Positions 1 through 42,555 of a stretch of 64,000 nucleotides of DNA are shown here, piece after piece. Position numbers and translations under genes: made by a program. Where the stretch lies: NCBI GenBank assembly GCA_965637545.1, contig OZ281499.1, positions 10,850,001-10,914,000 on the forward strand, given 5' to 3'. This stretch comes from Phallusia mammillata. Its lineage: Eukaryota. The first letter of the stretch is position 1, and every line of letters begins with the position of its first letter. Below the pieces are notes generated by a model. The model searched no databases, was not told the DNA's origin, and was given only the letters and a program-made list of their open reading frames with translations.

Positions 1-1381
1 GTGTGACACGATTACGGAAAGACTATATCCGCTCAGAAAACAACATCCTAACTTGGAATGGAATGATTTGATACTAAAAGCTTACAATGAACGAATCTGC
101 CTCTCTGCCACTGGTTATCACAAGTGAGAAAAATATATATATTTCTTGTTTTTGCCTTCATAGGCGTAAGCGACGCATTATGCTTTTCAGGACACCTGGA
201 ATGTTTTCCACTTGGGACTCTGAAACAGGTATAGTCGAAGGCCGCCCTGCTTGCTTTTTTTCATACGGTGCAGCTGTGTCCGAAGTCGAAGTGGACTGCT
301 TGACCGGTGATCACGTGGTGCTTCAAACTGACATTGTGATGGACGTCGGAAGAAGTCTTAACCCTGCCATCGATATTGGACAGGTTTGCAAATTTGCAAA
401 GCTACAAAACTCTGATCTTCGTGTAACATGTCTTTGTTCTGTTGCAGATTGAAGGGGCGTTTGTTCAGGGTTACGGGTTGTTTACCATGGAGGAGCCCTT
501 GCACACCCCTGGTGGTCAGGTTATTACGTCAGGACCCGGTGTGTATAAGATTTCTGGTTTCGGGGATTGCCCGCGGAATTTCAATGTGCACCTTTTAAGA
601 AACTCTGATAATGACCGAGCAATATATTCGTCGAAGGTACAACTATTTAATTTAAAAACAACTTTTTTTGCTTCTTTACCGTGTATTTATCAGATCTAAT
701 CAGAGACTATAAATGAAGTATTTTTATCAATCGATTTTGGATTTGTAAATTGCATTTCAATTAATCTACAGCGATTGTATTTAATTTGTTGTACGGCCAG
801 ATATTTATAATTCGAAAACCTCTCAGCTTAAATGAATTTGTGATATTTGTCCATACAAGATAACCTTCGACCAAGACTATGCCAATATAAACTGGATATC
901 AACATTGCAATGATTAAGAAATCAATAACTGTTTTTTGTTTTATTGGTAAAAAGTATAATAAAACATAAAAAACATGCACGCAACATATCTTGAATTATT
1001 ATGTAACCAAGTTTATTTACCTTGCTTGTCGTTTAAATGTATTAATTGGAATACTGGTAGGCCCGTTATTTTCAGAGACGATGTTTTACAGGGTGTGGGA
1101 GAACCACCACTTTGTCTAGCGTCTTCGGTGTTTTTCGCAATCAAAGACGCGATTCAATTTGCTCGGAAGGAATCGGGATTGTTCGGATGGTTTCGACTCG
1201 ACTCCCCAGCAACGTCCGAATCAATCCGAATGGCATGTGGAGATTGTTTTACAAAACAGGTTTGTTTTCGCAGGTGGGGATGAGTCGTGTTAAAGTTTTA
1301 AAAATCCTTTTACTTCAGCATGAACATCACATTGACCCAAAAGTAGAAAAGGACCTGAAACCATGGAGCATTCGAGCCTGA
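1..1381 (+). CDS. XDH-like: 3' end of an XDH/AOX-family molybdo-flavoenzyme gene, class A copy 1 (5' part is outside the window)
   Basis: GT-AG exons 1-123, 191-383, 448-636, 1092-1259 and 1319-1381 splice in frame. They encode [17 protein letters not shown]...[32 protein letters not shown] (catalytic Glu1261 equivalent) and the C-terminus KPWSIRA*. Exon sequences match A3/A4 rather than B2/B5. Confidence 0.93.
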
Positions 1382-3967: not shown

Positions 3968-6900
3968 TCAAGCTGTGACTGACCAAGGAGTCAAATTCCT
4001 TTCTTCTTTTTCGTCGGCATGATGTTTATGCTGAATTTCCACAACATAGGTTATTTTCAAATTGCGAAATTAAACTTTACCAAAAGTAAGAGTTCGGATT
4101 TACTGAAACATTAACGCTACCAAAGAATTTGCAAGAAAAAAATCGTTTGTCCGAGGTTTAGTTACCTTGGTAAACCGAAGGAAAGCTTATGTTATCTGAT
4201 AGATTCACCTGCTTAATAAAGTTGTCTCCGCATGCCATTCGAATACGTTCAGCGGTAGCTGGAGCGTCCATTCGGAATGGTCCAAATATCCCCGAATCAT
4301 TTCGTGCACTTCCGACCGCCGACTTAATAGCATAGAGCACGGAAGCAGACAAGAAGAACGGCGGTTCCCCAATTCCCTTTAAAAATCCAAATATTAGAAG
4401 CAAATGAAGTAGAAAGTGAAACAGTTGTTTTGAACCTTGGATGAATAAATAGCTTTGTCGTTCTCCGAATTACGCAGCAAGTGAACATTGAACTGGCGAG
4501 GGCAATCACCGAAACCGGGAATCTTGTAAGCACCTGGGCCAACTGTTAGAAGATGGCCGCTAGGGGCGTGCAAGGGTTCCTCCATCGTAAACATTCCGTA
4601 ACCCTGAACAAATCCGCCTTCAATCTGCAAGAATAAAACCTATTAAACCTAATGTCGTTTCGACGACGATCTTGTATTACCTGTATGATATTACATCAGT
4701 CACTAGCTAAGTTTTGAATTAGTGACGTCCTGACAAATGGTATTCGGCATGACAAAACATAGGTGTTTTGTTAATACGTAGTATGGTGGAATGTAACAAG
4801 CTCATAACCTGTCCAATATCGATAGCAGGGTTAAGACTTCTTCCTACGTCCATCACAATATCAGTTTGAAGCACCACGTGATCACCGGTCAAACAGTCCA
4901 CCTCGACTTCGGACACAGCTGCACCGTAAGTGTAGTAGTTTGCTATTCGACCTTCGATTTTACCTTTGGCCAAATCCCATTTGCTGTTCATATTCGGAAC
5001 TCTAAAATATCGTGTTTTTTACAAATTATCCAACTAATCCAAATCTTAGTTTACATATATGTTTTTATTCAAGTTTGGTGGAGCGTCTTGTAAACTCATG
5101 TATAACTAGCTGGATTTTTCCCTTAATGATTCACTTAAAACACAAGTACAATATATTGATCTGATACACGTCGGGTAACTTGTAAGTTGTTGACAATTTA
5201 TGTTACAGATTTCGTAGTGCAATCACTTTTCCTCTTTTATCAGGTAAGGTCCTGTTAATTTTTACTTGTAATATCCTGTAGCAGAAAGGCTTATACGATT
5301 CATAAATGCCTTCACAACCAAATCTTTCCATTCCAAGGTGGGATATTCCTTCCTCAATGGAGCAAGTCGTTCAGATATTTTGTCACAGGCTGCCTACAAC
5401 AAAATTTTTGTTAATATTTCTGCAGCTAAACGTGGAATATTGGAATTTAACAGACATGAACTACATGATTTACCTTCACAGCTCCACCATTAATGTCAGA
5501 ACTGATGCTGGCAACTGTTGCAATGGTGTTTGGGACTGTATTGGTGCTTGTTTCTGAGATGTGTATAAGATCAACTGGAATCTCCAGACAACGACCGGCG
5601 ATCTGAATTAAAAAATAATCAAGATTTTTTTTTCTGACAGCTAAGAACAAACAAACTTAAGACTCAAATTTTCCAACCTGTATCATCTTTGTGTGCAATC
5701 CTTGGCCCATCTCGGTTCCACCGTGGGTTAAAGAAACTGAACCGTCAGTGTAAATGTTCACGAGCGCCCCCGCCTGGCAGCGAAACTCTGGAAATCCGAC
5801 AGCAAATTTGGTTGGAACACAGGATATTCCACGTTTCTTCCATCTAAAGACAACTTTTTGCTAATGTGCGTTGTTTAATAATCACAGTTTTTTGATGTTG
5901 TTTGGAGTCGGTGAGTTCGAATCTTAGCAACAGCAAGTTTTGAACAACTTTTTCCGTAAACCACAGTCGACAATATCACCTGTTTTTCGTGTTGTAAAGG
6001 TCTACCGCTTCTTTTCTTTTGTGGAAATTTGATTTTTCGATGCAGTCATCCCAACATCGTCTCGCTGTACAGGGGTCGAGGCTTTGACCGTAGTGTGTAA
6101 ATTCCCCCATTTCCTTGTACATGTTCATCTCACGAATCTTAAGTGCAAAAAAATCTAACTGTGTAAATTTATAAACCGCACCAAACTAGATACCACTTCG
6201 GTGCAAACTGTTTAAAAACTGCAAGTCAGACCGGCTTCACTCGATTTTACCTTCTCTGGCATGACCCCGAGATGTTCAGCAACTTTCGTGATCCAAGATT
6301 CTGTAATAAACATCGACTGTGGGCCACCGAAGCCCCTGAAAGCTGTACTGGATGCAATGTTGGTGCGGCAAGCGGTCCCTCGAACGTGTATGTTAGGTAT
6401 ACTAAAAACACAATTAAAAATATTGGAAAAACTATATTAGACAGGAAAACCAAACTGTGTAGAAGCGCTCTAGGATTATTTAACAACGTAATACACCTGT
6501 AACAGTTGTCAAAATGGATTGTGGATTTTGATAATACTGCCATCGAATAGTCGATAGTGTGACCAGCATTGCTGTACAACTCAGCCTTCAAAGCCTTCAC
6601 TTTTCCGTCATTCATAAATCCAACCTGTGCAAATAAATGCATTCACAGATGATTACCATGTAGTTGCAATGTACAACATCTAAGAAGGTGTGTTCTTTAT
6701 CACATGTGTTAAATAAGAAATAGACAACATTCGCCTTTAAGGCAATATGTGGAACATTAACGACACCTTATCTTACATAAAGGACAGTTACTTTCCTTGT
6801 ATTTGGCGTAAAATGGATGTCGACCTCCCGTCATTATCATGTCATCCTTGCGGGAAAGCATACATCGAACTGGTCGGCGACATCTACGAAGCAAACATGC

Positions 6901-9900
6901 AGGGAGGTTAACAAATAGAGTTGAGGTTTAGTCTGTTGTAGATTAAGGCCAAATCGGTAAAAATTTCCAATTTACTTGTGTGCTGCAATGGCCACTGGAT
7001 TACTGACCAACCAAAATCGACTTTCCTTGCCTCCGAATCCGCCTCCCATTCTTTTCATTCTGATAACAACCTTGTTTCGCTGAACGCCGAGATTTCTAGC
7101 AACCTTAAGTCATTTGTAAGCGTTTGTTATATTTGATGTATGTTTCGCTATATGTGCATCCATTAAATTAATGTTAAAGGATGAAAGTGACCATATTTTT
7201 AAAAATGGTTTGATTTAAGTAAATTAAATTGCAAACACGCGCTAAACCTTTTGCAGGTAACAGGATAAATTTCAATTTGGAATAAAATGTTTTAAACTTC
7301 AAACTCAGAGCACATTGGTGGAATTATTTGTGGATATGTTGGCATTATGTTAACGAATGTGGTTTATAAACCAACCTGACTCTGTAAGGTAGTTGGATCT
7401 TGACTTGAAGAGTAAATTTCCATCTCATCATCTTCTAGTTTTGGAACAGCAAGACACACTTGCGTTTCCATGTAAAAGTGCTCCTGACCAGCGGTTCTAT
7501 AACAAAAAAACACAAGACGTGGTTTTACACTGCCGCAAAAGTAATATCTTGATACATTCACAACTCTCAATTTGTGTCCAGCAGCTCAACTTGCTTATTA
7601 ACTCAAGTTTTTTTTTCAATTGTCCGCTGACATATTTTACGCCAATATACCTGACATCCCCTTCAATCACGTGATCGCACTCTTCCATCGCTTTGTCGGG
7701 ATCACCACGAATAATTTGTTTGCTCGGATCCAAGAAAGATTTTTGTTTAATCGCATCCTAACATTTAAAGATAAGATTAAATATCAACTTTATGCAGTCA
7801 ATTTTGTTCAACATGTGTCAAATAAATATATTTTCACACGGCTTAACGTTGCATATATTGGCTTTTTTGTTTTCAGTTACCTCAATTGTGACAATAATAG
7901 GTAAAATATCTTCGTATTCGATTCGCACCAACTGAGCAGCTCTTTGTGCATGTGCTTGAGTGTCAGCGATAATAGCACCGATGGTGTGTCCCACACAAGT
8001 AACCTGCAACATTTGTTAGTTGATTTACCAGACCTCACAATAAATAGTTTTTTTGTGTGCGAGGCTGACGATATCCGCAACGAGAAGTAGCTCCCCAAAA
8101 CTGTTTTGATCAAACCACATTCTATTGCTTTGACCTAATTGGAGACAGTAAAAATGTGACTCTATTGCTATTAGAGTGATAATAACCAATACATTTTACA
8201 ACACAAAGCCTTTGCTTGGTTTAATAAACAATTCTAAGTACCAAAAAATATTAGAATTTGGTCAAAAGGCCTAAAACCGAGGCGCCTTACAAATATGTAC
8301 CAGTTATTTTAAGCCATTTAAATGTGTAAATTTTTTTGTGTAAAGCTTGTTTTTCACCTTGTCCACTGCAAAAACCCGATCGTCATCATCAATTACTCTA
8401 ACATTGTTCGAACCCGGCACGTCACGATGATTGACGTACGTCACAAAACCCGGTGAAGTCATAGCTTTACTGATGTCAACGTTGCGTACGTAGGCGTGCG
8501 CTCGAGTACTCGTTACAAAACATAGATAAAGCTCATCTGGAAATCAAATAGTTTTTAATTGCATACATTGGTTTTCAAAAAGGTGTGTATTGTTTGTTAC
8601 ATAATTTTAAAAACAGTTTACTATTTCTAAAATGTAGCATAGAATAGAGGTTGGATAAAAGTTTTGATTGTTCTTTTTGGGGGCAAAATCTTGAGCGATT
8701 TTTGGAATTAGTTAATGTTTTGTCTGTCCTAACTGACACAACTTGTACTTTTCAAACTATCACTCCATTTGAGCAAATATTTCGGTCGGGCACGAAGTAT
8801 AAGTTTTAAGACTTGGTAACGTGCATCTATAAAGTTGGCTGCGTAAACACTTTTGCATGAAGAAAAAACGAAGAGGTTGATCAGATTGCAGTCCTACAAT
8901 TTTACTTACCTTTATACACTGGCATGTCATCTATGTAAACAGCTTCGCCAGTTGTGTGTTTTTCTCCAGATACATGTTTCACTGGTCGCCCAACTAGGTC
9001 TTCTAATGCTTGATTCGAGTGAGTCTAATATGCAGTAAAAATATTACTCTCGAACTAAAAAGTACGAAAAAATAGTTAATATTTACCCCTTGCCAGGTCT
9101 GCGTTCCAAACTCGTAGTGTTGTGAAAAGTCATCCAAAGCACTCATTTCTTCTGGTTTGATATTTTCCTTTCAACATCATAACGAATGTTATGATATCAC
9201 ATGGTATCTTCACACACAAAAAGTTACCTTGATTATTCCTTTTTCGATCAGACAATTCTTTACGTATAGGTAGAACTTAAAGAAAAAGCTTGCTGCAAGA
9301 GCTTCCCTGTATTCCACCATTCCTCCTGGAGCATCCAGACTCAGTGGAAAGTCCTCCCTTATCCATTGCATGTAGTTTTGGACCAAATCTTCCGTCCACT
9401 CTCTGTTAATTAGAAATTGCAAATGTCATCATATATTTAAAACTATCATGTTGTTGCTTCACCTTCCAATCATATTTTGAATGGTCTTTTCTGGCATAAC
9501 TGAAGTAGCAGCCATTCCACCAAATGCGGCTACAAATTTGAGCACTTTGCAAGTTCCTGGATGAAAGACGACTCGCATGGCTGCATTCACGATAGCAATA
9601 TCGTCTTCTCGACGTTTGGATTGCTTGTAAGCTTTCATGTACTCGTCCTAAATAACAACAGTGTATACCTCAAAATGTCACAACCATTATGTAGCACAAA
9701 TGTGTTTTACCTTTGTATTAAATGGAAGATAAACAGAAATGAGAACTTCGCCCTTCTCTGCACATGTCGTCCTGTATTTGGGGAAGAAACTTTGATCCAT
9801 CAAAACCTGTCGATCTTTAGCACGAGAATGTAATCTGAACGTAGCAATACTTTCGTTTGCCATAAGGATTGGATTGAGATCAGAGATGGGACTTGCTGTC

Positions 9901-12420
9901 ATTATGTTGCCCCCAATCGCCTGTGGAACAACATTGATAAATTCCACATTGTGTTGAGTCAATACAACTTAAAGAACTTACTGCAACATTTCGGATTTGA
10001 TCCCCTGCAAACCAATGAAGCATATCGAGAAACGCGCGCATCCATTGTGTGCGAAACGTTTCAGTGGTTTGTATGATATCCTGAAATTGCTCCTTGATGC
10101 TTGTCAAAGTGCAAGCTGACCCGATAATCAGACCTGACAAAATATATCTAAATTGCAAATCGCATTGTTTAAAATGCATGCAACTTAGTTGAAATCTTGC
10201 TCGAATTGTGAAGGTTGTAATATATTATTGCCGTATAGGTGCAGTTTTAATTTGAACTTTTATGAACTCATGTCAAACCCTGACCTTCATCAGTGTTTGA
10301 TGTTGTAACAAGTTCCTTAAGACAAGTAGGAGAAATGATAACAGGAAACATTCGTCCTTTCACGTTGCATTCAACCCCGATCTCAGTGTTTCCATTTACC
10401 AACTGAGCTTCTGGGTAAATTGACTTCAGTTCAATCAGCTGATCTAGTGACGTAGGACGAAACCACGTGACCCGTTCCCCGACGAACTTTAGTGTTTGGT
10501 GCTGTTCAGATCTGCTTTTGATCTTAAATGCAATGGTAAACACATTTTTTATTATCATCGTTTGTTTGCGATTACCAACAACGGTAATTCTACCAAATGG
10601 TTAAGTAAACAACTATATTTTCCGTATCTATAGTCAATCAATACAAACCGTTTGGGCATACTGTTTAGCGTGAAACGAAATGATTCTATTTATGGAGCAA
10701 TAACGTGGTTTACTTTATTCCATACATAATAATGAAATAAAAAAGAAACCTACCATAAGTTGAGGGGGAAATATTATTTCTTGTGACGGATCGTATTTTC
10801 CAAAGCACACGTTCAAGGCCGAGTGAGGATCATCTACAGCATTTATTACTAGACATAACATGCAGAGAGTTAAACCCATTGTTGCTTTGTTATCCAATGC
10901 CGCAAAGCTTTTGTGGGTTCTACACTGAGTGGATTGAAAATACAAACACGGTTAACGGGATTTTCAAGCACGAGTTTCGATTATAATATTTCAAAACATC
11001 CACTGATAGATGTCCGCAAGCGAAACAGCTTGGTGTGTGACTAAAGTTTACCTGTTAATAACGTTTTCCAGATTTTGTTACGTGGGTTTATAAAGCTTTG
11101 AATATTTGCAAAATAAAGAACTATGAATACAACAAAATTTTTACAGTAATCGTAAATGTTAGTAATTAACAAAGACACGAGATATGTTCGTTAGTAAGAC
11201 TATTGAAATACCTCCATTCTGCTTGCAGCAATTCGCTCCCATAGGACAGCCAGAACCAGACTCCGAAAAAGTACTGAAGGCTGTATTAATAGGCATAAGA
11301 AATATTTTTCCCTGTATTACGTTCAATATATAACAAGTAACATTACTACATGATTTACCACTTAAAATCGGTCTGTATCCGGTGCACCGACAAAGATTTC
11401 CTTGCAAACATCCTTCGATATCCTCAGCTCTTGGCACTGATTTGTTACGTAACAATGCGTACATTGACATCACAATACCGGGAGTACAAAAACCACATTG
11501 AGATCCGTGAAATTTAGAAAGGCGCTCCTGCAAAAATGTGAAGAAATCTTAACATGTACAACAAAACGTTGTATTTGACTCAATTAAAAATACTGAACCT
11601 GCACTGCATGTAACTTGGTCTTGGTGCTGCCGATTCCCTCTACTGTAGTAACAGCACAACCATGTACTGAAACCACTGGAGCTAAACACGCGTTTGCCGA
11701 ATAATGTCTAACAAAGGTAGCAATAAAATGCTTTGTCATGTATCTATACAATATCTTATAATATTCACTGACATGATTTTGCTGTTGATGTGATCCCACT
11801 TCGAGATCATAACAGTGCATGCTCCACATCCTCCTTCCCCACATCCCAACTTGGATCCCGTAAGACGCACTGCAATAACAAACAGGAGATTTCATACGTT
11901 TGTTAAACAAATTATAATTTTGTTAATTTATGGCCCTCGAAAGTGCTGCAGACAGTTTATTGATGTCGTAGGAATCTGCAAGGCAAAGTTACACTAAATT
12001 GTAGTGGTAAAATCGTTCTCAGTAGGTTTCTGTTATTTATGTTAGTTGAAAACCTATGGTACATAAACTTACATTCTCGCCTGAGATAGGTCAAAAGCGT
12101 AGTTTCTGGGTCTGCATGATATTCCACAACCTGTTAATGCAGTAAACATCGATGACTAATCTTAAGTAACTCAAATGCAAGGTTCGCAAACTCACAGCGC
12201 ACGTTTCAAAATATTTAACTTACAAATGACAATTTACAGCGCACGTTTAAATATTTCAGACATCGACTGTTACAAGCTTCCACATACATAAAAACAACAA
12301 AAACATTCACATAGACATAACCTTTTCGCCATTAACATAAAATTCCAACACATCAGTGCTTTTCTTCGTCCATTGTGTTTTGTCGCTATCTACTTCGCCG
12401 TGGCAGTTAAGAATCACCAT
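3968..12420 (-). CDS. XDH-like: XDH/AOX-family molybdo-flavoenzyme, class B copy (about 30 coding exons, apparently intact)
   Basis: ATG at 12420 ([33 protein letters not shown]). 2Fe-2S motifs [10 protein letters not shown] and [17 protein letters not shown]; FAD domain [27 protein letters not shown]; Moco domain [44 protein letters not shown]; stop TGA at 3968-3970. No frameshift found by eye, provided the GA donor at 6795 is used. Confidence 0.92.
6625..6795 (-). other. Putative non-canonical GA-AG intron in B2
   Basis: Exon ends KYK (AAG) followed by GAAAGTAAC; the next exon begins VGF after tttgcacag. Retention hits an in-frame TAA, and the GT at +5 shifts the frame. Confidence 0.75.
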
Positions 12421-16328: not shown

Positions 16329-18827
16329 TCATGCTCTAATGCTCCAAGACTTTACGCCCTTCTCTACTTTGGGGTCAGTGTGTTGTTCATGCTAAAATAA
16401 TAAGTTAAAAATGTTTTGTCAGTGTTCAACCTAATTTAAGTTGACTATTAACAACAAACCTGTTTTGTAAAACAATCTCCACATGCCATTCGGATTAATT
16501 CGGACGTTGCTGGGGAGTCAAGTTGAAACCATCCGAGCAATCCCGATTCTTCCCGAGCAAATCCAATCGCGTCTTTGATTGCGAAAAACACCGAAGACGC
16601 CAGAAAAAGGGGTGGTTCTCCGATAGCCTGTGCAAAAACAAATTTGAATGTTATACAACCATTTTTATCACATGATGTTATGACGAACAGTTTTCATGTA
16701 CTTTCGGGGTTCAAATTAAAATGAAACACGTTAACCGGATAAATTAGAATTTCTCGACTGACGATAATAGGTTAAAAATACAATCGCAACATTTTGAGAT
16801 CTATAACAAAAAATGTCTCTTTTGTTGACCAATCGTTTCTGAGTGAAAATAAACTGTTAAGAAAACTAATTGTTGTACCTTAGATGAATAGATTGCTCTG
16901 TCATTCTCTGCGTTTCTTAAAAGATGCACATTGAAATTCCGTGGACAATCCCCGAAACCAGGAATCTTATACACTCCGGGTCCTGACGTAATGACGTGAC
17001 CACCAGGGGTGTGCAAGGGCTCCTCCATGGTAAACAACCCATAACCCTGAACAAACGCTCCTTCAATCTGCAACAGAACATGGCACCATCAAGTTTGATA
17101 AAATTACAGTTTCCTTCCATTTTAAATATAACAAACAAATAATGTTCGTGGACAAAATACGTCCACATATACCTTTACGGAATACATTCTTTTCGCAATT
17201 AGTAATTATATTACACGATTTTTAAACTTCGTCATTTTGCAAACCTGTCCAATATCGATAGCAGGGTTAAGGCTTCTCCCTACGTCCATCACAATGTCAG
17301 TTTGAAGCACCACGTGATCACCGGTCAAGCAGTCTACCTCGACTTCGGACACAGCTGCACCGTACGAAAAATAACAAGCAGTGCGGCCTTCGACTATACC
17401 TGTTTCAGCATCCCATGCGGAAAACATTCCGGGTGTCCTCAATAAAACATATTGTGTACAAACTAACCGTTTCTGTTTCGACGGATTTTTTGTGAATTAG
17501 TAGCAACATACTATTTAATGAATATCACTAAATGTTCCAAACTTGATGCAAAATGACTATTACGAATGTTAACGATTGGCTTTTTTGGAAATGTTTTAGT
17601 CACTATGTCAAATTTACGTTTCGTTTTCTCACTTGTGGTAACCAGTGGTAGAGAGGCAGATTCGTTCGTTGTAAGCTTTTGTAATCAAATCGTTCCACTC
17701 CAAGTCAGGATTTTGTTTTCTCAGCGGGTCTAGTCTTTCCATTATCGTGTCACACGCATCCTAAAATGTTGGTTATTTATTGATTTTTGACTTACATAAA
17801 AGTGTCGATTTGCGAATTTGGTGTGAAAGTCAGGCCCCATAAAAACTCACCTTCACTGCCATTCCGTTAAGATCTGTGCTGAAACTTGCTGCTGTCGCTC
17901 TTGTGTTGGGAACAGTAACTGTACTCGTCTCACAAATGTGAATTCGCGACAAAGGAATCCCAAGACACCTTCCCGCCACCTGTTTTGTACTTGCGTGGTA
18001 TTATTGTTTCAAAATGGGTTATTTTTTGACATTTTGCAATTATAAACAACGATGGTTAAAACGTTTACAAATAATAAGTCGTAACTATCAAAATATTGTT
18101 TAATTTTCTAAACACCTGCAACATCTTAGTGTGTAATCCTTGTCCCATTTCAGTTCCTCCATGTGATAGATAAACCGAACCGTCAGTGTAAACGTGAACT
18201 AATGCACCACCATGACACCAGTTGTAAGGGAAACCTATTGCATATTTCGTCGGAACACAGGCAATGCCCTTTTTGCGCCATCTAAAATCACAATGTTCTA
18301 TTCTCGCACGTTATATGGTACTGAGTGTTTTTACCTGAAGCAGGTATACGACTTGACTTAACAAACTTCTTAAGCTTATTCAGCTTATATTTGCGTTCAA
18401 TTAGTTTAATGTAGAAGTAGAACAATTATTTCAATATTACAGATCAAGCCGACCTGCTTTGTTGGTTAAACTGCGCAATTTGTTCTTTTCTCTGCACCAT
18501 ATTTGATTTCTCAATTACTTCTTCCCAGCATCTTCTGGCTTGAAACGATTCAAGTTTTTGGTTGAAATGTGTCACGTCTTCCTCCTTGTACATATTTAAA
18601 TCCCGAAACTGAAAACAACATATTACTTTCATGCCTTGACTCGTTTTACTTCGTATTCAGCAACCGTTTGATGTCGCTTTAACTTTACCATCCGAAAACA
18701 TTTTTGTTAACTCACAACAAGGGGCAGGAACTTGGCCGAACGGTCTGGCGCGCCTGACCCATATACAGACATAAAAAAAAACTGATCGGGATTCGTCCCC
18801 GGGAGAGTCCTGGGTTCGAACCCCGTG

Positions 18828-18858
<31 letters not shown>

Positions 18859-21800
18859 AACTCACAACAAGTATTTCATCTGCTACTCAACATATAGAGT
18901 AAAACAAATGAAAAACTGTTTGCATAATTTTTAAATAATGATGTTTGTAAAAGATTTATTGAAAGTTATTTGTATACTTTCTTATTCGTTCAGAAAACGT
19001 GCGTTGAAAATCATCGTTTGCAAGCGCATATGAATGCAAAAAAAAATTACTCACACAGTTCCAACATATTATCTCTGTATTGTTTAGACCCGATTGTTTA
19101 ATCTCGCACCAACCTTTTCTTGCGTCATGTTCAGAAATTGGGCGATTCGAGTCATCCAACTCTCAACGATCAACATTCCCTGTGGTGCACCAAAACCACG
19201 AAAAGCGTTGCTCGATGAAATATTGGTTTTGCAGATTTTACCGTGTATAAGAACGTTTGGGATTCTATCAAGTTGAAAGTGCCGATGTCAAAAGAAATAA
19301 AACTAGGATTTGCAATTTTTTACCGTCCTGGCGACTTACTTTTGGCTATTTTCATACATTAATGTAAAAAAGAATCTAAAATTTGTAGTTCATACTAATT
19401 TTTATTTATCTCTGGCAATCATAATTGTTGTTTTTTTACTTGTAACAATTGTCGCTGTGTATAACTGCCTTGCCCAGTACACCGCCAGAAAGATCAAGTG
19501 TGTTACCACCGTTGCCATACAGGTCCAGAATTAAAGCCACAAGTTTGCCGTCTTTCATAAACCCAACCTGTGAAGAAAGCAACGCATATTTCACAAGTGA
19601 ATCGTAATAAAAAACAACTAAACAAAATTCCTGAAGTACTTTATATCATATAGGCCAGTTTAGCTCTTACTTTTAATGGCTTGTAATGAAACGTGGCGTA
19701 CTTATATAATTCATATTTTTCCGGGGTCTATTCGTTGCCACATTGCAGCAAAGAGGTTTGTCTGACGTTATTAATTACTAAATTTAAAACTAGCCTTGAA
19801 CTTACCTTGTAATTGGCAAAAAACGGCTGGCGCCCTCCAGTGATAATCATGTCCTCTTTTCTGCTCAACATACATCTCACTGCTTTGCCACATCTTAAGT
19901 ATATTTGCAATGTTTATCTACCGGCATCGAGACGGCATCGTTTTGTTCAATAACCTACTTATGTGCCGCAACTGCAACAGGATTACTGACAACGAGAAAC
20001 CGAGTTTCCTTGCCTCCGAATCCTCCTCCCATCCTTTTCACTCTACTTACCACTTTGTTTGCTTCTACCCCAAGCAATGTAGCCGTCTGTGAGAAATCAC
20101 ACATAAATACCATTCATAACATTCAACATGAAATTCGTTACATTTAGCCAATCCCGTCATTATAATATTACACAATACCGTGCGTTGAAGCATAGATGGA
20201 TCTTGGGATGAACAGAACATCTCTATTTCTCCATCTTCGCCTTTCGGAACTGCGATGCACGCTTGTGTCTCGAGGTAGAAATGTTCTTGACCTCCTATTC
20301 TGTGAATGTATTGGCAAAACGTAAACATTCAGATCATCATCAGCTACCGATTTCATTTTACACCTAACCTGACTTCTCCCTCGATCACGTGATCGCACGT
20401 TGCCATGGCAGTGATTGCGTCTCCGTGAACTACATTCTTGGAGATGTCAAAGTAGGACTGATGATGCATAGCATCCTTTCAAAAAAAAAGAATTTTCAAA
20501 AAAATATATGCATCACTTTTCCAAACTATGTGTTACAAACAAGCATGTTTGTTTCAGGTTTAATATTTACTTCTATCGTGATGATTACAGGTGATATATC
20601 CTCGTAGTCGATTTTCACCAACTGAGCAGCTCTTTGAGCGTGAGCCTGTGTGTCAGCTACAACTGCTCCAATCACTTGACCGAAACACGTTACCTTAGGT
20701 AACAAATAGAATGTTTCTGTTTAAACCACACATTTTAGCTGATTTTGCATGTCAGCCATTTTAAGTTTACCTTGCTGGTTGCAAACACCTCGCACAGTTC
20801 GCCTGCAATCGGTATTTCGTTGGTTCCTGGCACGTCACGATGGTCTACATACGTCACAAATCCTTCGCATGCCACTGCTTTGCTGATGTCGACGTTTTTG
20901 ATGTAAGCATGTGGCCGGATACTTGTAACCAAGCACAAGTACAACTCATCTGCAACCATTATCAAATATTGCAAGTTCGAATTGACCCGGTAGTGGAAAA
21001 TGTGTTAAGGGCGAGGTTTACCAATAAAACATTAGAAAACGCTGTCAATGTGTGACACGATTTTTTTGTTTTAGCATAATTTGCATTGTTTTCTGATAAA
21101 AAGCGAGACTTCATAAACCAACCTGAAAATGTTGGCATGTCATCAACATATACAGCTTCACCAGTTGTGTGCTTGTCGCCAGATGCATGTTGCATTGGTC
21201 GACCAACCATGTCATCATGCGGTTGCCCATCGGTGGTCTACAAAACACCAGGAATTGCACAGATTTGTTTTTAGTGGAAAATATTTGTATTTTTAGTGTT
21301 TTTAGTATTTTAGTAAACGTAGGATCACAGATGTGGGCGTAAAAATTGTTTTAGCTGATTTGGAAAATACCATCACGTTTGTTAAACAAATGCTCTGTAC
21401 AAATAACTTCATTAAAAATAAGAGAACAAATACTTTATGTTTATTTGTTAAAAACCGTGATCGTTTCTTTTTAGTGTACGTGATCAGAGAGATTCGTAGT
21501 TGCTCATTACTAAAGTATGTTTTTATTTCACTCACATCTTGCCAAGTCCTTGTGCTCATTGGAATATGAATTGCATCCGTCGGTTTAAACGTTGTGAGAT
21601 TTTGAAGCTTCAAATCATCTTCGAGCTTAAAATATACAAGATACTCGCAAAATGTCCGGAAGATTAGAGAGAATAAAAACGAAATCCTTTAAAGAGTGTG
21701 TTGGAAACATTACGGAAATCACTTACAGTCGTCAGCCCCTTCTCGACTAGATTGCCCCGGACGCACAGAAAGAACTTAAAGAAAAAGCTTGCTGCAAGAG

Positions 21801-24800
21801 CTTCTCTGTATTCCACCATTCCTCCTGGAGCATCCAGAGCCAACGGAAGATCTTTTCGCAACCAAATCATAACATCTTTCATCAGTGTTTCATTCCATTC
21901 TCTACATAAAAAGCACATATGCAAAAATAATTTACACTAATATCAAAGAAAGGCACTTACTTTCCAATCATATTTTGCATGGTCTTTTCTGGCATAACTG
22001 AAGTAGCAGCCATTCCTCCAAATGCAGCAACAAATTTAAGCACTTTGCAAGTTCCAGGATGAAAGACGACACGCATGGCTGAGTTCACTATAGCAATATC
22101 GTCTTCTCGTCGTTTGGATTGCTTGTAAGCTTTCATGTACTGGTCCTAATTGTAACTAATGTAAAACATTTCACTTGGTATTATTTTGTTTGGTGCAATA
22201 CCTTGGTGTTAAACGGAAGAAAAACAGAAATGAGAACTTCGCCCTTTTCTGCACATGTCGTCCTGTATTTGGGGAAGAAACTTTGATCCATCAAAACCTG
22301 TCGATCTTTAGCACGAGAATGTAATCTGAACGTAGCAATACTTTCGTTTGCCATCAGTATTGGATTGAGGTCAGAGATGGGACTTGCTGTCATTATGTTG
22401 CCTCCAATTGCCTACGTTGAAAAATATAATGCCACAATTTTATTTTATGCTTGTAAGTTTGTAACGGGACTGCTTGTTTGTAGCCTATGTAATGCCATTT
22501 GTTTAGATATTGCTATTACAGATTAAGTATTTGAAGCAAAATTGAAAATCGTACTGTCTCACCGCAACGTTTCGTATTTGATCACCAGCAAACCAGTAGA
22601 TCATTTCCACCAGAGATTCCAGACATTGTGTTTGATACTTCGTAAAACTTCCAGAGTCAATAAAGTTCTGAAGTTCTTCCTTAATTTGACTGATCGTACA
22701 TGATGACCCAATGTTTACACCTGTACAAATTAAACGGTAATTGGTTTATTTTAGATGCTGGCTCAACATTACTACTTTTATGAAAATGAAGCAAAAATGA
22801 AAGTTATAAAGCAGAATGACTTGTTTACTTGTTAGAAACCAAAACTGGGCATAGACCTGTTGAACAGCTGTGAGGCCCTTGTGATGATTTACAATAATTA
22901 CAGTGTCCACCAATAAAGCCTTGGAGTTTACCTTTGTCGTCTACAGATATTGTTTTTAACTCTTTCACGTCAAGGGGAGTAATAATATATTTGAAATGGC
23001 GTCCTCGAACATTTGCTTCGACTCCAATTTCAGTGTTTCCATTCACCAACTGAGCATCAGGGTAAATGGATTTCAACTCGACCAATTGCTGAAGTGACGT
23101 TGGTCGAAACCACGTGACGCGTTCTCCGACGAATTTTAGTGTTTTGGGGTCTTCAGATTTGGATTCTATCTGAAGATAAACAATGGCAAAAAGCTTGGTA
23201 ATTTACAGTTTGTAAAGAAACAGAAAAATATATGACTAAAACGAGTGCAACCATTTTTCACACAGATGGAACAAAATACGTAGTTTGTAACAACTGCTTA
23301 AAGTTTTCTACTAATTACAATTCATTATATGCACCACTGCTTATAACATTATAACGTAGACCAGTGGTTTGCCTAACAGGTGATTATTCTTAGCCAAGCG
23401 ATTGCTAAATCATTTCCGGCTACTTGTTGAAAAACGATGTAACTAAAACATGATTTACTACTACCATAAACGCAGCGCACACGTAAAAATCTGTCTGTTT
23501 TTGGATTACTATTCAGACTAGCTGACACAAACGCTATTATACACTCTTTTCGGCAGTTTGTGCAATGTATCAAAACAATCGTTTTTTTCGAATAGTTTGA
23601 TTATGGGGTAGTTAATGATCTTAACTATTGTTGATCTCATCTTAATTAAAAGTAAAATATTCAAATGTTAATCTTAGTTTATCCGAACTGAACTGAAATC
23701 TGAAGTTGTTTGTTTCAAGCCCGACGAGCCTGATCTAGAATAAAGATAGTGATTGATAGATAAAAATTACCCTAATTGAGATTTTGCCTACCCCATATTA
23801 TATATACATTGCCTACCCTATATTACAATGACAAACTAATCCAAAACACAGCAACCGCAGATTATTTATAAAATATACCAACAGATCTGGTGGAAACAGG
23901 ATTTCTTGTGTTGGGTCATATTTGCTGAAACAAACTAACTGGGATGCATGGGGATCATCATTTCTCATTAAATTTTTGTCAGATGTTTCTGGAAAGCCTG
24001 TAAAACACGAGCAGCCGATATTGTACTTTGTACACAATCTGTGCCTACATTCATTACCATTTTGAATTGGTTTGTTTTTACAGCATTTAGCTCCCATCGG
24101 GCATCCAGCCGTTGAATCGATAAATGTATTGAAAGCTGAAACATAAAATAGTGAGTTTGCTGACCGGCTGATATTTACTGATGTTTTTCTCCAGACTTGG
24201 CGACACGGTTTTTAGCATACGGGTGTTTGTAAATGTCTACATTAAACATGTCAGACATTTTCTCAGACATACCACTTAATATAGGTCTGTATCCTGTGCA
24301 TCGACATAGATTTCCCTGCAAACACTCTTCGATATCTTCAACACTTGGAACTGGTTTGTTGCGTAACAATGCGTACATTGACATCACAATACCAGGGGTG
24401 CAGAAACCACATTGAGATCCATGAAATTTAGCAAGACGCTCCTGAAATTTTTGACAATAATTGTAAAGCAACTTATTACGTAAAAAATCACGTTCATACA
24501 ATACCTGCACTGCATGTAACTTGGTCTTGGTGCTGCCAATTCCCTCTACTGTAGTAACAGCACATCCATGTACTGAAACCACTAGAGCCAAACACGCGTT
24601 TGCCGAGAAATGTCTGTTGGGAAGATAACATGTTGGCTGTTTTACGGATGCATAACGATCATTCTTACTGACACAATTTTGTTGTTGATGGGATCCCACT
24701 TTGAGATCATAACAGTGCAAGCTCCACATCCTCCTTCCCCACATCCCAACTTTGATCCCGTAAGACGCACTACACACATTTTTAACACGACTTATAGTTG

Positions 24801-25167
24801 CAGTCTCATTTTAAAAGTACACCTCAACCAGTCAAAACTTACATGAACACCTTAAGTTTGAAAATTGAAAATGCATATCACTGAAGTACCAATTTCTAAC
24901 AGTAACTTACATTTTACTCGCAAATACGACAGTAAAGTGGTTTCCGGGTCAGGTGACTCCTCGACGATCTGTTAAAAGTAAGCAGTGAAAATGCTTTCTG
25001 ATTTGACTATTCAACATCAATCTTCAATGATTTGAGTTACAGAACAAAATCTTCAATGATTGAGTTACAGAAGACTTTTTTTAACAAACCTTTTTCCCAT
25101 TTACGTAGAACATTAGCACATCACGTGACATGACCTGCCAATCAGTGCTTACTTCCGTTGTTACCAT
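16329..25167 (-). CDS. XDH-like: XDH/AOX-family molybdo-flavoenzyme, class A copy 3 (apparently intact)
   Basis: ATG at 25167 ([26 protein letters not shown]). The exons I traced splice in frame with GT-AG sites and give the Fe-S, FAD and Moco motifs ([47 protein letters not shown]). Ends KSWSIRA* at 16329. Confidence 0.92.
18721..18855 (+). mobile_element. tRNA-derived SINE (or retroposed tRNA-like RNA) with poly(A) tail, in an A3 intron
   Basis: A-box-like tggccgaacgg, B-box ggttcgaaccc, ~28-nt poly(A) tail and a perfect 15-bp TSD gttaactcacaacaa (18706-18720 and 18856-18870). Confidence 0.85.
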
Positions 25168-33084: not shown

Positions 33085-36000
33085 ATGGTAAGAACGGAAG
33101 TGAGCACTGATTGGCAGGCTATGTCACGTGATGTGCTAATGTTCTACGTAAATGGGAAAAAGGTTTGTTAAAATTAAGTTTTTTCTTTTGTAACTCAATA
33201 ATACTAAACTAGATTGATGTTGAATAGTCAAATCAACAAGCATTGTAACTGCTTATGATTATTAGATCGTCGAGGAGTCACCTGATCCGGAAACGACTCT
33301 ATTGACGTATTTGCGAGTAAAATGTAAGTTACTGTTAGAAATTGGTATTTTAGTTGTTTACATTTTCAATTCTTAACGTTAAGGTGTTCATGTAATTGAC
33401 GGGTTGAGGTGTACTTTTAAAATCAGACTGTAAAAATGAGTCGTGTTAAAAACATGCAGTGCGTCTTACGGGATCAAAGTTGGGATGTGGGGAAGGAGGA
33501 TGTGGAGCTTGCACTGTTATGATCTCAAAGTGGGATCCCATCAACAACAAAATTGTGTGAGTAGGAATGATCGTTATGCATCCGTACAACAGCCAACATG
33601 TTATCTTTTCAACAGACATTTTTTGGCAAACGCGTGTTTAGCTCCAGTGGTTTCAGTGCATGGATGTGCTGTTACTACAGTAGAGGGAATTGGCAGCAAC
33701 AAGACCAAGTTGCATGCAGTGCAGGTATTGTATGAACGTCATTTTTTACGTAATAAGTCGCTTTGCAATTATGGTCAAAATTTCAGGAGCGCTTCGCCAA
33801 ATTTCATGGATCCCAATGTGGTTTTCTGCACCCCCGGTATTGTGATGTCAATGTACGCATTGTTACGAAACAAACCAGTTCCAAGTGTTGAAGATATCAA
33901 AGAGTGTTTGCAAGGAAATCTATGTCGATGCACTGGATACAGACCTATATTAAGTGGTATGTCTGAGAAAATGTCTGTCATGTTTAATGTACATATTTAC
34001 AAACACCCGTATGCTAAAAACCGTGTTGCCATGTCTGGAGAAAAACATCAGTAAATATCAGACGGTCAGCAAATTCGGTATTTTATGTTTCAGCTTTTAA
34101 TACATTTCTCGATTCAACGGCTGGATGCCCGATGGGAGCTAAATGCTGCAAAAACAAACCAATTCAAAATGGTAATGACTGTAGGCACAGATTGTGTACA
34201 AAGTACACTATTTGCTGCTCGTGTTTTATAGGCTTTCCAGAAACATCTGACACACATTTATTGAGAAATGATGATCCCCATGCATCCCAGTCAGTTTGTT
34301 TCAGCAAATATGACCCTACACAGGAAATCGTGTTTCCACCAGATCTGTTGGTATATTTTATAATTAAACTACGGGAGTTGTATTTTTGATTTGTTCCTCA
34401 TTGCAATATAGGGTGGGAAATAATCCCAATTAAGGTAATTTGCACCGATCAATCACTGTCTTTATTCCAGACCAGGCTCGTCGGGCTTGAATCAAACAAC
34501 TTCAGATGTCGGTTCAGTTCGGATAAACTAAGATTAACAGGTAAAACCATTCAAGAATTTTTTGATACACTGCACAGAGTTCGTAAAAAGCAAGGGCGAT
34601 AAACACAACAACTGAATAGCTCCTAATAGCGTTTGTGTCAGCTAATTTGAATAGTATAAATCCAAAAACAGACAGATTTGTACATGTGCGCTGCTTTTAT
34701 GGTAGTAGTAAATCATGTTTCAGTTACATCGTTTTTAACAAGTATCCGGAAATGAACTAGAAAATCACTTGGCGTGCTAAGAATAATCACCTGTTAGCAG
34801 TTGTCAACCTCTGTTATAATGTTATAAGTAGTGGTGCATATAATGCATTGTAATAAGTAGATAACTTTAAGCAGTTGTTACAAACTAAGCATTTTGTTCC
34901 ATCTATGTGCAAAATGTTTGTACTCGTTTTAATCATCTATTCGTCTGTTTCTTTGCAAACAGTGATTTACCGACCTTTTTACCATTGTTTATCTTCAGAT
35001 AGAATCCAAATCTGAAGACCCCAAAACACTAAAATTGGTCGGAGAACGCGTCACGTGGTTTCGACCAACGTCACTTCAACAGTTGGTCGAGTTGAAATCC
35101 ATTTACCCTGATGCTCAGTTGGTGAATGGAAACGCTGAAATCGGGGTGGAAGCAAATGTTCGGGGGCGATATTTCAAACATATTATTACTCCCATTGACG
35201 TGAAAGAGTTAAAAACAATATCTGCAGACGACAAAGGTAAACTCCAGAGCTTTATTGGTGGACATTGTAATTATTGTAAACCAGTATAAGGGCTTCACAG
35301 CCGTTTAACAGGTCTATGCACAGTTTTGGTTTCTAACAAGTAAACATGTCATTCTGCTTCATAACTTTCATTTTTGCTTCAGTTTTTATGAAAATAGTAA
35401 TCTTGAGCCCGCACTTTAAACAAACCCGCTCACCAATTACCGTTTAATTTGTACAGGAGTCGAAATTGGAGCATCATGTACGATCAGCAAAGTTAAAGAA
35501 GAACTTCAGAGCTTCATTGACTCTAAAAGGTTTGCAAAGTATCAAACACAATGTCTGGAATCTCTAGTTGAAATGATCTACTGGTTTGCTGGTGATCAAA
35601 TCCGAAACGTTGCGGTAAGACAATGCGATTTTATGTTTCAAAAAGTTTCATTCAATAATAAGAATATCCAAATAAATGCGTTACGCAGGTTACAAACAAG
35701 CAGTTCCACTACAGACTTCTCTGCCTAAACTTACTCAATTCTGATAAAATTCTGACATTCTTCTATTAAACGCAGGCGTTCGGAGGCAACATAATGACAG
35801 CAAGTCCCATCTCTGATCTCAATCCAATCCTCATGGCAAACGAAAGTATTGCTACATTCAGATTACATTCTCGTGCTAAAGATCGACAGGTTTTGATGGA
35901 TCAAAGTTTCTTCCCCAAATACAGGACGACATGTGCAGAGAGGGCGAAGTTCTTATTTCTGTTTTTCTTCCGTTTAACACCAAGGTAGTGCACCAAACAA

Positions 36001-42000: not shown

Positions 42001-42555
42001 AGAGCAATCTATTCATCTAAGGTAGAACGATTAAGTTTCTAAGCATTTTTTCCACGTAGGAACAATAGGCCAACAAAAGTATCTCATTTTGGGTGATATA
42101 TATATGTATATATATATATCTTTTGGCAAAAGTTGTGCAATTCTATTTGTATTTTTTTTTTAGTTTTATCAGAGAATTGTCGTTAATCAACAGATTTTAA
42201 TTATCTTGTTGCTCCCTTTTACTCAACGGTTGCATAACATTCAATTTTGTTTTTACATAGGCTATCGGAGAACCACCCCTTTTTCTGGCGTCTTCGGTGT
42301 TTTTCGCAATCAAAGACGCGATTCAATTTGCTCGGGAAGAATCGGGATTGCTCGGATGGTTTCGACTCGACTCCCCAGCAACTTCCGAATCAATCCGAAT
42401 GGCATATGGAGATTGTTTTACAAAACAGGTTTTTTGTTCATAGTCAACTTAAATTAAGTTGAACACTGACAAAACATTTTTTACTATTTTAGCATGAGCA
42501 ACACACTGACCCCAAAGTAGAGAAGGGCTTGAAATCTTGAAGCATTAGAGCATGA
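33085..42555 (+). pseudogene. XDH-like: XDH/AOX-family class A copy 4, pseudogene
   Basis: Collinear with A3 but with multiple lesions: +1 T at 33822-33825, -1 near 35940, TGG>TGA at 36682-36684, loss of the whole IPN...AFRGFG exon near 40175, -2 near 40420, +2 (gc) at 41519-41520, and TGG>TGA at 42538-42540. Confidence 0.9.
37960..39296 (+). mobile_element. Non-autonomous Helentron/HINE-like element in an A4 intron
   Basis: About 1.34 kb absent from the ~90-nt homologous A3 intron. Starts actagaaaggtggc, carries two ~290-bp internal tandem units (about 38620-38921 and 38935-39223), an A-rich simple stretch and a 3' hairpin gtcctct-N7-aggggac (39274-39294). No TIR or TSD seen. A second copy lies at 62806-64000. 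The superfamily assignment is inferred. Confidence 0.55.

What the first reader, a model, noticed from the sequence alone, without database searches (positions are those of the whole stretch)
19440..19560. XDH-type scaffold with a non-XDH molybdenum pocket: Arg880 lost in all four copies where the exon is visible
Seen: aligned to XDH DLSxSIMERALFHMDNCY, the Arg position is Lys in A3 ([18 protein letters not shown], 19469-19471), A4 (39945-39947) and B2 ([18 protein letters not shown], 6526-6528), and Ala in B5. The PTKFGISFTVPFLNQ loop is one residue shorter ([14 protein letters not shown] in [15 protein letters not shown] in B), and GRHP is GRQP in class A. Glu802 (GGKE), Gln767 (GQEH), Arg912 (AFRGFG; exon deleted in A4) and Glu1261 (GEPP) are kept, as are the XDH-type FAD/NAD features RREDDIA and FFPKYR. 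Known (bovine numbering): Arg880, Glu802 and Thr1010 determine purine binding, and AOXs typically replace both Arg880 and Glu802 and lose the EDDIA acidic motif. Inference: these may be an independently derived class of NAD-linked aldehyde/heterocycle hydroxylases, neither true XDH nor vertebrate-type AOX.
Basis: partly seen in the sequence, partly recalled or inferred. Interest (0 to 1): 0.75.

Follow-up and report, generated by a model that had tools for sequence, protein, structure and literature searches.

The report
Sea-squirt XDH genes lacking Arg880
A sea squirt has eight neighbouring copies of the purine-oxidising enzyme xanthine dehydrogenase, and every copy has replaced the arginine that normally holds xanthine, mostly with lysine. 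The assembly holds no ordinary copy, so either a lysine version still does the old job or the whole family now works on other substrates.

Summary
A formal alignment to bovine XDH puts Lys at Arg880 in A3, A4 and B2, and Ala in B5. Four more copies just outside the window carry Lys, Lys, Lys and Val. All eight also have Thr1010 replaced (Pro, or Lys in X1) and a pocket loop one residue shorter. Gln767, Glu1261 and the NAD-type FAD site (Tyr393, Arg394, Asp429/430) are kept in all eight; Arg912 is kept in all but A4, which has lost that segment. Glu802 survives in five copies.

Three whole-genome searches found no Arg880 XDH. They found only this cluster, one 3' fragment, and two very divergent genes on another contig.

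The eight genes form one strongly supported clade inside animal XDHs. Seven look intact and are under purifying selection. A3 is transcribed and spliced. A4 is decaying.

Lys880 paralogues in a starfish, a snail and a nemertean arose separately. A shared origin with vertebrate AOX is disfavoured but not rejected (AU p about 0.07).

"Not true XDH" is unproven, because a bacterial Arg-to-Lys mutant loses only about 20-fold in rate and ascidians make urate. I could not fetch other tunicates' genes. A neighbouring window of this scan noted the same pocket in three upstream copies.

The parts
1..1262 (+). Glu1261 lies at 1101-1103. The rest of the gene lies before the window; there it has Asp802 and Lys880.
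   Evidence: tblastn and my spliced alignment to bee XDH P0066.
4194..12348 (-). Gene B2. The model is intact, with 29 exons and about 1313 aa. Key residues: Gln767 7484-7486, Glu802 7023-7025, Lys880 6526-6528, Arg912 6335-6337, Phe1009 5792-5794 followed by Pro, Glu1261 4365-4367. One intron has a GA-AG boundary, after the exon ending at 6796.
   Evidence: Spliced alignment. dN/dS against B5 is 0.16.
16457..25116 (-). Gene A3. The model is intact, with 29 exons and about 1303 aa. Key residues: Gln767 20287-20289, Glu802 20006-20008, Lys880 19469-19471, Arg912 19198-19200, Phe1009 18230-18232 followed by Pro, Glu1261 16616-16618, Tyr393 22265-22267, Asp430 22098-22100.
   Evidence: Spliced alignment. 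Pfam domains found exon by exon: Fer2_2, FAD_binding_5, CO_deh_flav_C, Ald_Xan_dh_C, MoCoBD_1 and MoCoBD_2. Spliced contigs occur in three RNA-like runs and not in a DNA run.
19440..19567 (-). The flagged exon of A3, equivalent to bovine residues about 848-890. It carries Gly879-Lys880 in place of Glu-Arg.
   Evidence: Ungapped phmmer alignment to bovine XDH. RNA joints at 19264/19440 and 19567/19806, with no base differences in the exon.
33136..42431 (+). Gene A4, a decaying mirror copy of A3. It has Lys880 at 39945-39947. It lacks the AFRGFG segment (Arg912/Phe914) and two other conserved segments.
   Evidence: Spliced alignment to the A3 model. dN/dS is raised to 0.31-0.38.
44255..52287 (+). 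Gene B5, the mirror copy of B2. The model is intact. Key residues: Glu802 49335-49337, Ala880 49836-49838 (codon GCG against AAA in B2), Arg912 50005-50007, Phe1009 50825-50827 followed by Pro, Glu1261 52126-52128.

Best explanation
This is a lineage-specific radiation of the animal's XDH orthologue. The animal is an ascidian. The cluster holds eight genes in tandem and inverted order on one chromosome; four full genes and one gene end lie in the window.

Shown:
- Seven copies have intact models of about 1300 aa.
- They keep all cofactor domains, the catalytic base Glu1261, Gln767, Arg912, Phe914 (Tyr in X8) and the NAD+-binding residues of the FAD site.

Inferred mechanism: the substrate is hydroxylated at the molybdenum centre. 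Electrons then pass through two [2Fe-2S] clusters to FAD and on to NAD+.

The purine-holding part of the pocket was rebuilt before the genes multiplied: Arg880 to Lys, Thr1010 to Pro, and a loop one residue shorter. It then kept diverging between copies at positions 802, 873, 876, 879, 880, 884, 1011-1013 and 1078.

Most likely function (inferred): no other XDH is present, so the Glu802+Lys880 members (A3, X2, B2) most likely still oxidise hypoxanthine and xanthine or close oxo-heterocycles such as pterins. In them Lys would supply the positive charge that Arg880 normally gives the transition state. The other members have probably moved to other heterocycles or aldehydes: X1 (Ala802/Lys880/Lys1010), X3 (Asp802), X8 (Gln802/Val880) and B5 (Ala880).
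For: - Lys/Ala/Val at 880 in all eight copies, by formal alignment.
- The eight genes form one clade (SH-aLRT 100) on a long stem inside animal XDHs. They are 65-93% identical to each other and 52-54% identical to deuterostome XDHs.
- Lys880 occurs in both main subclades, so it is ancestral by parsimony.
- No canonical XDH in the 240-Mb assembly by three searches: PF02738, PF20256 and a frog XDH segment spanning residues 880-1010. All first-look candidates were scored.
- dN/dS is 0.15-0.24 among the intact copies.
- A3 mRNA is spliced as modelled and the Lys codon is unchanged.
- NAD-site residues Glu263, Ser356, Asp360, Tyr393, Arg394, Asp429/430, Pro501 and Arg508 are kept in all eight.
- Pocket columns are enriched for variation between paralogues: 5 of 12 against 14 of 342 columns that are conserved in 113 canonical XDHs (Fisher p 1.6e-4).
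- Literature: R310K in Rhodobacter XDH lowers kred only about 20-fold, against about 10^4 for R310M (PMC9966888).
- Literature: ascidian tissue has XDH activity and stores urate (PMC6320678).
Against: - No enzyme activity is known for any copy.
- Thr1010, which binds hypoxanthine and xanthine, is lost in all copies. The loop is shortened. Leu873, Ser876 and Phe1013 are changed. Together these could abolish purine use even with Lys880.
- In the three RNA-like runs the copy with about ten times the contig depth of A3 was X1, which also lacks Glu802. Contig depth is a poor measure of expression.
- A canonical XDH could sit in unassembled sequence.
- I could not retrieve any other tunicate's genes. 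The timing of Arg880 loss relative to loss of a canonical copy is therefore inferred from this genome alone.
Confidence: 0.55

Rival explanations
1. None of the copies is a xanthine dehydrogenase. All are NAD-linked hydroxylases of aldehydes or non-purine N-heterocycles, and the species has lost XDH activity or has it encoded in unassembled DNA.
For: - Arg880 and Thr1010 are both gone in all copies, the loop is shortened and other pocket residues are changed.
- Arg880 is described as conserved in characterised XDHs and never in AOXs (PMC5746545).
- Pocket positions vary between copies as expected for diversified substrate ranges.
- No uricase gene was found, so purine breakdown may be reduced.
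Against: - Five copies keep Glu802, which AOXs never keep (PMC5746545).
- Lys conserves the charge, and R310K keeps most activity.
- Ascidians are reported to make and store urate and to have XDH activity.
- The two other XDH-family genes in the genome lack Glu802, Arg880 and Phe914, so they are worse XDH candidates.
Confidence: 0.27
2. The cluster shares its origin with vertebrate AOX. One XDH duplication in the common ancestor of tunicates and vertebrates gave the AOX line. Tunicates then lost the XDH copy and expanded the other.
For: - Forcing the cluster and mammalian AOX into one clade costs only 27-35 log-likelihood units and is not rejected (AU p 0.072-0.075).
- Two conserved XDH columns changed to the same residue in both groups.
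Against: - The best trees place mammalian AOX with vertebrate XDH (SH-aLRT 100) and the cluster outside.
- Both groups sit on long stems, which invites false attraction.
- There are no shared changes at positions 802, 880 or the NAD site.
- Only three mammalian AOX sequences were available, all cut from fused gene predictions.
Confidence: 0.13
3. The cluster belongs to an old Lys880 paralogue class shared with other invertebrates such as starfish, snail and nemertean.
For: Lys880 recurs in Patiria, Littorina and Lineus 'XDH/oxidase-like' proteins. The Patiria protein also has Pro1010.
Against: Each of those proteins groups with XDHs of its own phylum. A joint clade is rejected (AU p 6e-69 under LG+G4 and 2e-7 under LG+C20).
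Confidence: 0.01
4. The copies are dead genes or assembly duplicates, so the substitutions reflect decay.
For: - A4 has lost three conserved segments and has a raised dN/dS.
- X3 carries a large insertion and a 200-N gap in one intron.
Against: - Seven models are full length without stops.
- dN/dS is 0.15-0.24.
- A3 is spliced in RNA.
- B2 and B5 differ at dS 0.18 and lie in inverted order, so they are not haplotype copies.
Confidence: 0.03

Closest known systems
Animal xanthine dehydrogenase (bovine, rat and human XDH; PDB 1FO4, 3UNC, 1WYG, 2CKJ)
   Same: - Same seven-domain architecture.
- 52-54% identity to deuterostome XDHs.
- Gln767, Arg912, Phe914, Phe1009 and Glu1261 are kept.
- The NAD-binding FAD-site residues are kept.
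- Glu802 is kept in five of eight copies.
   Different: - Arg880 is absent in all eight copies.
- Thr1010 is replaced.
- The 1009-1016 loop is one residue shorter and carries a new conserved Cys.
- Residues 873, 876, 879, 883, 884, 1011-1013 and 1076 are changed.
- There are eight copies instead of one.
Rhodobacter capsulatus XDH mutant R310K (the Arg880 equivalent)
   Same: It has the same Arg-to-Lys change at the residue that stabilises the transition state.
   Different: It is a laboratory point mutant in an otherwise canonical pocket, and kred falls about 20-fold (PMC9966888). Here Lys is natural and comes with other pocket changes.
Vertebrate aldehyde oxidases (AOX1-4; PDB 4UHW, 3ZYV)
   Same: They are XDH-derived paralogues in tandem clusters, with Arg880 lost and a varied pocket.
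   Different: - AOXs also lose Glu802 and the NAD-binding features, and use O2.
- The best tree places them with vertebrate XDH, apart from this cluster, although a joint origin is not formally rejected.
Aspergillus nidulans HxnS (purine hydroxylase II, nicotinate hydroxylase)
   Same: It is an independent XDH duplicate that stays NAD-linked and changes substrate through edits around Phe1009/Thr1010 and Phe1013.
   Different: HxnS keeps both Arg880 and Glu802 and has an Ala inserted between Phe1009 and Thr1010 (PMC5746545). Here Arg880 is lost and the loop is shortened.
Unstudied 'xanthine dehydrogenase/oxidase-like' paralogues of marine invertebrates (Littorina saxatilis, Lineus longissimus, Patiria miniata, Lingula anatina)
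   Same: They carry Lys or another residue at 880, often keep Glu802, and have Thr1010 replaced. They occur as lineage-specific duplicates.
   Different: They arose separately within their own phyla. At least Patiria also keeps Arg880 copies, whereas this genome has none.

Membership tests
Xanthine oxidase family of molybdo-flavoenzymes (XDH/AOX type) | Domain order: 2Fe-2S, 2Fe-2S, FAD_binding_5, CO_deh_flav_C, a/b hammerhead, MoCoBD_1, MoCoBD_2. | tested here: met
   Pfam hits on A3 exons cover every domain tested except the first Fer2, where the exon scanned was too short to score. That region, including the cysteine motif, aligns along the full length of XDH. PF02738 and PF20256 hits occur in all copies.
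Xanthine oxidase family of molybdo-flavoenzymes (XDH/AOX type) | The catalytic base Glu1261, plus Gln767 and Arg912 at the molybdenum centre. | tested here: met
   These are invariant in all eight copies, except that Arg912 is lost with its segment in A4.
True xanthine dehydrogenase (EC 1.17.1.4) | Arg880 (bovine numbering). | tested here: not met
   Lys in six copies, Ala in B5 and Val in X8.
True xanthine dehydrogenase (EC 1.17.1.4) | Glu802. | tested here: inconclusive
   Glu in X2, B2, A3, A4 and B5. Ala in X1, Asp in X3 and Gln in X8.
True xanthine dehydrogenase (EC 1.17.1.4) | The Phe1009-Thr1010 pair and the standard loop length. | tested here: not met
   Phe1009 is mostly kept (Ile in X1, Tyr in X2). 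Thr1010 is Pro, or Lys in X1. The loop is one residue shorter.
True xanthine dehydrogenase (EC 1.17.1.4) | NAD+-binding FAD site (Tyr393, Arg394, Asp429/430 loop, Glu263, Ser356, Pro501, Arg508). | tested here: met
   All are conserved in all eight copies by alignment to mammalian XDH.
True xanthine dehydrogenase (EC 1.17.1.4) | Oxidises hypoxanthine and xanthine with NAD+. | not testable with these tools
   This needs an enzyme assay.
Vertebrate-type aldehyde oxidase | Both Glu802 and Arg880 replaced, and the NAD-binding features lost. | tested here: not met
   Glu802 is kept in five copies and the NAD site is kept in all.
Vertebrate-type aldehyde oxidase | Falls in the vertebrate AOX clade. 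| tested here: inconclusive
   The best tree says no. The AU test does not reject a joint clade (p 0.072-0.075).
Fungal HxnS-type purine hydroxylase II | Arg880 and Glu802 kept, Ala inserted after Phe1009, and Phe1013 changed to His. | tested here: not met
   Arg880 is lost, the loop has a deletion rather than an insertion, and position 1013 is Trp, Arg or Leu.

The most novel reading that the evidence does not exclude
This ascidian, and perhaps ascidians in general, has no Arg880 xanthine dehydrogenase at all. On this reading the urate that these animals store is made by an enzyme with Lys880, Pro1010 and a shortened loop. That would be a natural replacement of a residue regarded as universal in XDHs. 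The same rebuilt scaffold then radiated into about seven NAD-linked hydroxylases with different pockets. Within the youngest gene pair, all three bases of codon 880 changed (AAA to GCG).
Probability: 0.4. Interest if true: 0.7.

Novelty: new variant of a known kind. Interest (0 to 1): 0.5.

Why it matters
Arg880, Glu802 and Thr1010 are the textbook markers used to tell XDH from AOX in annotation and in mechanistic work. This genome's only XDH-lineage genes keep the dehydrogenase FAD site and often Glu802, but none has Arg880 or Thr1010.

If a Lys880 copy makes urate, it is a natural test of how much the arginine really contributes. It would also warn against calling function from that residue alone.

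If none makes urate, a chordate has turned its whole XDH lineage to other substrates. In that case ascidian urate storage needs another explanation.

The cluster is also a compact series of seven related pockets. Such a series is useful for working out what sets substrate choice in this drug-metabolising enzyme family.

Tried and rejected
**Fetching Ciona, Styela or other tunicate relatives failed.**
- An alignment of a full-length XDH with exon pieces by reference was scattered by MAFFT and was unusable.
- A profile of the eight residue-880 exons found only one vertebrate fragment.
- The 131-aa open frame around the B2 exon, with the search restricted to the exon, found no candidate.

**The representative-library search gave no close relative.** I searched with the pocket-loop exon. 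It returned diverse XDHs at 71% identity or less and none with this loop.

**The long AU test did not finish.** treekit's AU test on the 67-row set was still running after three attempts. I replaced it with a 29-row IQ-TREE test.

**Other limits**
- Structure prediction was not possible, because spliced proteins may not be submitted.
- Kurosaki 2013, Garattini 2008 and Rodriguez-Trelles 2003 are not held. What I say of them is from memory.
- Full-text searches for tunicate XDH pocket residues found nothing.

**Readings considered and rejected**
- An ancient shared Lys880 paralogue class (rejected by the AU test).
- Pseudogenes or haplotype duplicates.
- The two C5 genes as a hidden XDH. They lack Glu802, Arg880 and Phe914.
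Full report
**1. What is at the coordinates**

The minus strand of window 19439-19570 encodes one exon of a xanthine-dehydrogenase-family gene. phmmer against all solved structures aligns it without gaps to bovine XDH residues 848-890, with Lys opposite Arg880 and Gly opposite Glu879.

Motif scans and tblastn show four such genes in the window plus the 3' end of a fifth:
- B2, about 4194-12348, minus strand.
- A3, 16457-25116, minus strand.
- A4, 33136-42431, plus strand.
- B5, 44255-52287, plus strand.

The order B2-A3 | A4-B5 is an inverted pair of two-gene units.

**2. Gene models and function**

I wrote a protein-to-genome spliced aligner and ran it with a bee XDH (P0066) as guide. It gave 29-31-exon models of about 1300 aa for eight genes on this chromosome.

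- *Domains.* Pfam confirms Fer2_2, FAD_binding_5, CO_deh_flav_C, the hammerhead domain, MoCoBD_1 and MoCoBD_2 on A3 exons.
- *Expression.* Contigs from three RNA-like runs of three studies carry exact GT-AG joints at the A3 introns. A DNA run lacks them, and the Lys codon is unchanged. These contigs correct two of my A3 junctions: the intron is 20300-20368, and one exon starts at 21727.
- *Selection.* Pairwise dN/dS is 0.15-0.24 among the intact copies.
- *A4 is the exception.* It lacks three conserved segments, including AFRGFG (Arg912/Phe914), and has dN/dS 0.31-0.38. It is decaying.

**3. The whole family in the genome**

Three searches found only the following:
- Eight genes at C6:10.798-10.950 Mb.
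- One 3' fragment at about C6:10.919 Mb.
- Two very divergent genes on C5, about 31-34% identical. They lack Glu802, Arg880 and Phe914.

The searches used PF02738, PF20256 and a frog XDH segment covering residues 880-1010. All first-look candidates were scored.

| Copy | Residue 880 | Residue 802 | Residue 1010 |
|---|---|---|---|
| X1 | Lys | Ala | Lys |
| X2 | Lys | Glu | Pro |
| X3 | Lys | Asp | Pro |
| B2 | Lys | Glu | Pro |
| A3 | Lys | Glu | Pro |
| A4 | Lys | Glu | Pro |
| B5 | Ala | Glu | Pro |
| X8 | Val | Gln | Pro |

Other features:
- The loop after Phe1009 is one residue shorter in all eight and has a new Cys conserved in all.
- Gln767, Arg912 and Glu1261 are invariant in the seven intact copies. 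Phe914 is Phe except Tyr in X8. Phe1009 is Phe except Ile in X1 and Tyr in X2.
- The NAD-site residues are invariant in all eight: Glu263, Ser356, Asp360, Tyr393, Arg394, Asp429/430, Pro501 and Arg508.

The assembly therefore holds no canonical XDH.

**4. Pocket diversification**

I took the 354 columns that are at least 90% conserved in 113 canonical XDHs and split them into pocket and non-pocket columns. Pocket columns are far more often variable between the paralogues: 5 of 12 against 14 of 342 (Fisher p 1.6e-4). I chose the pocket list beforehand from my memory of the bovine structure.

Positions 873, 876, 879, 883, 884, 1011-1013, 1076 and 1078 differ by subclade. The A type has Tyr-Asn-Trp-Cys-His after Pro1010. 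The B type has Glu-Phe-Arg-Cys-Gln.

In the young pair B2/B5 (dS 0.18), all three bases of codon 880 differ, AAA against GCG, in an exon that is 94% identical. That points to selection or a multi-base event at exactly this residue.

**5. Origin**

- The eight genes form one clade (SH-aLRT 100) on a stem of 0.63 changes per site inside animal XDHs. Mammalian AOX groups with vertebrate XDH (SH-aLRT 100).
- Lys880 occurs in both main subclades, so it predates the radiation.
- XDH-like proteins of Littorina, Lineus and Patiria also carry Lys at 880, and some Lingula and Haliotis proteins carry Lys or another non-Arg residue there. Each groups with its own phylum.
- One clade of all Lys880 forms is rejected (AU p 6e-69 and 2e-7).
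- A clade of the cluster plus mammalian AOX costs 27-35 log-likelihood units but is not rejected (p 0.072-0.075). Site patterns are uninformative.
- Independence from vertebrate AOX is therefore likely, not proven.

**6. The organism**

- The exact Ciona-type spliced leader followed by GT occurs 3179 times, against 0 for the reversed control, partly in 553-bp arrays. The leader sequence is from my memory.
- Earlier notes of this scan call the genome a sea squirt, and one names Phallusia mammillata. I did not check the species.

**7. What they most likely do**

Shown: these are intact, constrained genes, A3 is expressed, and they have a complete electron path and an NAD-type FAD site. The rest is inferred.

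- *Evidence that some copies still oxidise purines.* R310K in Rhodobacter XDH lowers kred only about 20-fold, against about 10^4 for R310M (PMC9966888). Ascidians have reported XDH activity and store urate (PMC6320678). This genome has no other candidate. I therefore think it more likely than not that the Glu802+Lys880 copies still oxidise hypoxanthine and xanthine or similar oxo-heterocycles, and that the others have shifted.
- *Evidence against.* Thr1010 and several channel residues are gone. The copy with the highest contig depth in the RNA-like runs is X1, which has Ala802. No uricase gene was found. That fits urate as an end product, but it also fits reduced purine catabolism.

**8. Comparison with known systems**

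Repeated XDH duplication with loss of Arg880 is known in vertebrate AOX, insect and plant AOX and, with other edits, fungal HxnS (PMC5746545). Two things are unusual here:
- The combination of Glu802 and the NAD site kept, Lys at 880, Pro at 1010 and a shortened loop.
- The absence of any canonical copy.

I found no paper on this in the held library. A neighbouring window of this scan recorded the same pocket states for X1-X3.

**9. Limits**

- No other tunicate sequence could be fetched.
- No structure could be predicted for spliced proteins.
- AOX sampling was three mammalian sequences cut from fused predictions.
- Contig depth is not expression level.

Noticed in passing
window 33136-42431: A4, the mirror copy of A3, is decaying. 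It has lost a 14-aa FAD-domain segment, the AFRGFG segment and a 12-aa segment of the second Moco domain. Its dN/dS is raised.
   Followed up: yes
window 6526-6528 and 49836-49838: In the young pair B2/B5, codon 880 differs at all three bases (AAA Lys against GCG Ala). The rest of the 126-nt exon differs at only five sites.
   Followed up: partly
C6:10842415-10848210 (before the window; loci L039/L040): A stop-free frame of 1932 aa, probably a mobile element, lies inside an 8-kb intron of paralogue X3. The fetched flanks of the cluster also hold a 200-N assembly gap, which I did not place. One X3 exon may be missing or mis-modelled.
   Followed up: no
C6:10919343-10920559 (about 5 kb after the window end; locus L041): An isolated 3' fragment of a B-like copy, covering only part of the second Moco domain. 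It is probably a dead partial duplicate.
   Followed up: no
C5:18.947-18.956 Mb (+) and C5:20.654-20.664 Mb (-); loci L031-L034: Two XDH-family genes that are 62% identical to each other but only 30-34% identical to the cluster. They lack Glu802, Arg880 and Phe914 and are probably old-type aldehyde oxidases. In the tree they sit on a very long branch and their placement is unreliable.
   Followed up: partly
window 6796 (B2) and 49591 (B5): My aligner needed a GA donor for the intron after this exon in both B genes. An earlier follow-up in this scan reports that mRNA removes it exactly.
   Followed up: partly
window 21962-22399, and C6:10805182: In three RNA-like runs a contig about ten times deeper than the A3 contigs lies on A3's FAD exons with about 6% differences. 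Its 29-nt private tag matches paralogue X1. X1 therefore seems the more abundant transcript, and the FAD exons are similar enough between copies to cross-map.
   Followed up: partly
window 18600-18999: A very high-copy repeat lies in an A3 intron. DNA contig depth is about 67,000 against about 50 nearby, and many loose ends occur at 18720-18780.
   Followed up: no
window 54844-55716 (-): A 290-aa open frame matches Ion_trans and, weakly, PKD_channel. It is a large exon of a TRP-like channel gene.
   Followed up: no
C3:11108338-11147465: Tandem arrays with a 553-bp period, each unit holding the exact Ciona-type spliced-leader sequence followed by GT. These are probably SL RNA genes. The genome has 3179 exact copies.
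   Followed up: no
whole genome G000: No match to the uricase family PF01014. This fits urate as an end product in this animal, but an exon-wise search can miss a gene.
   Followed up: no
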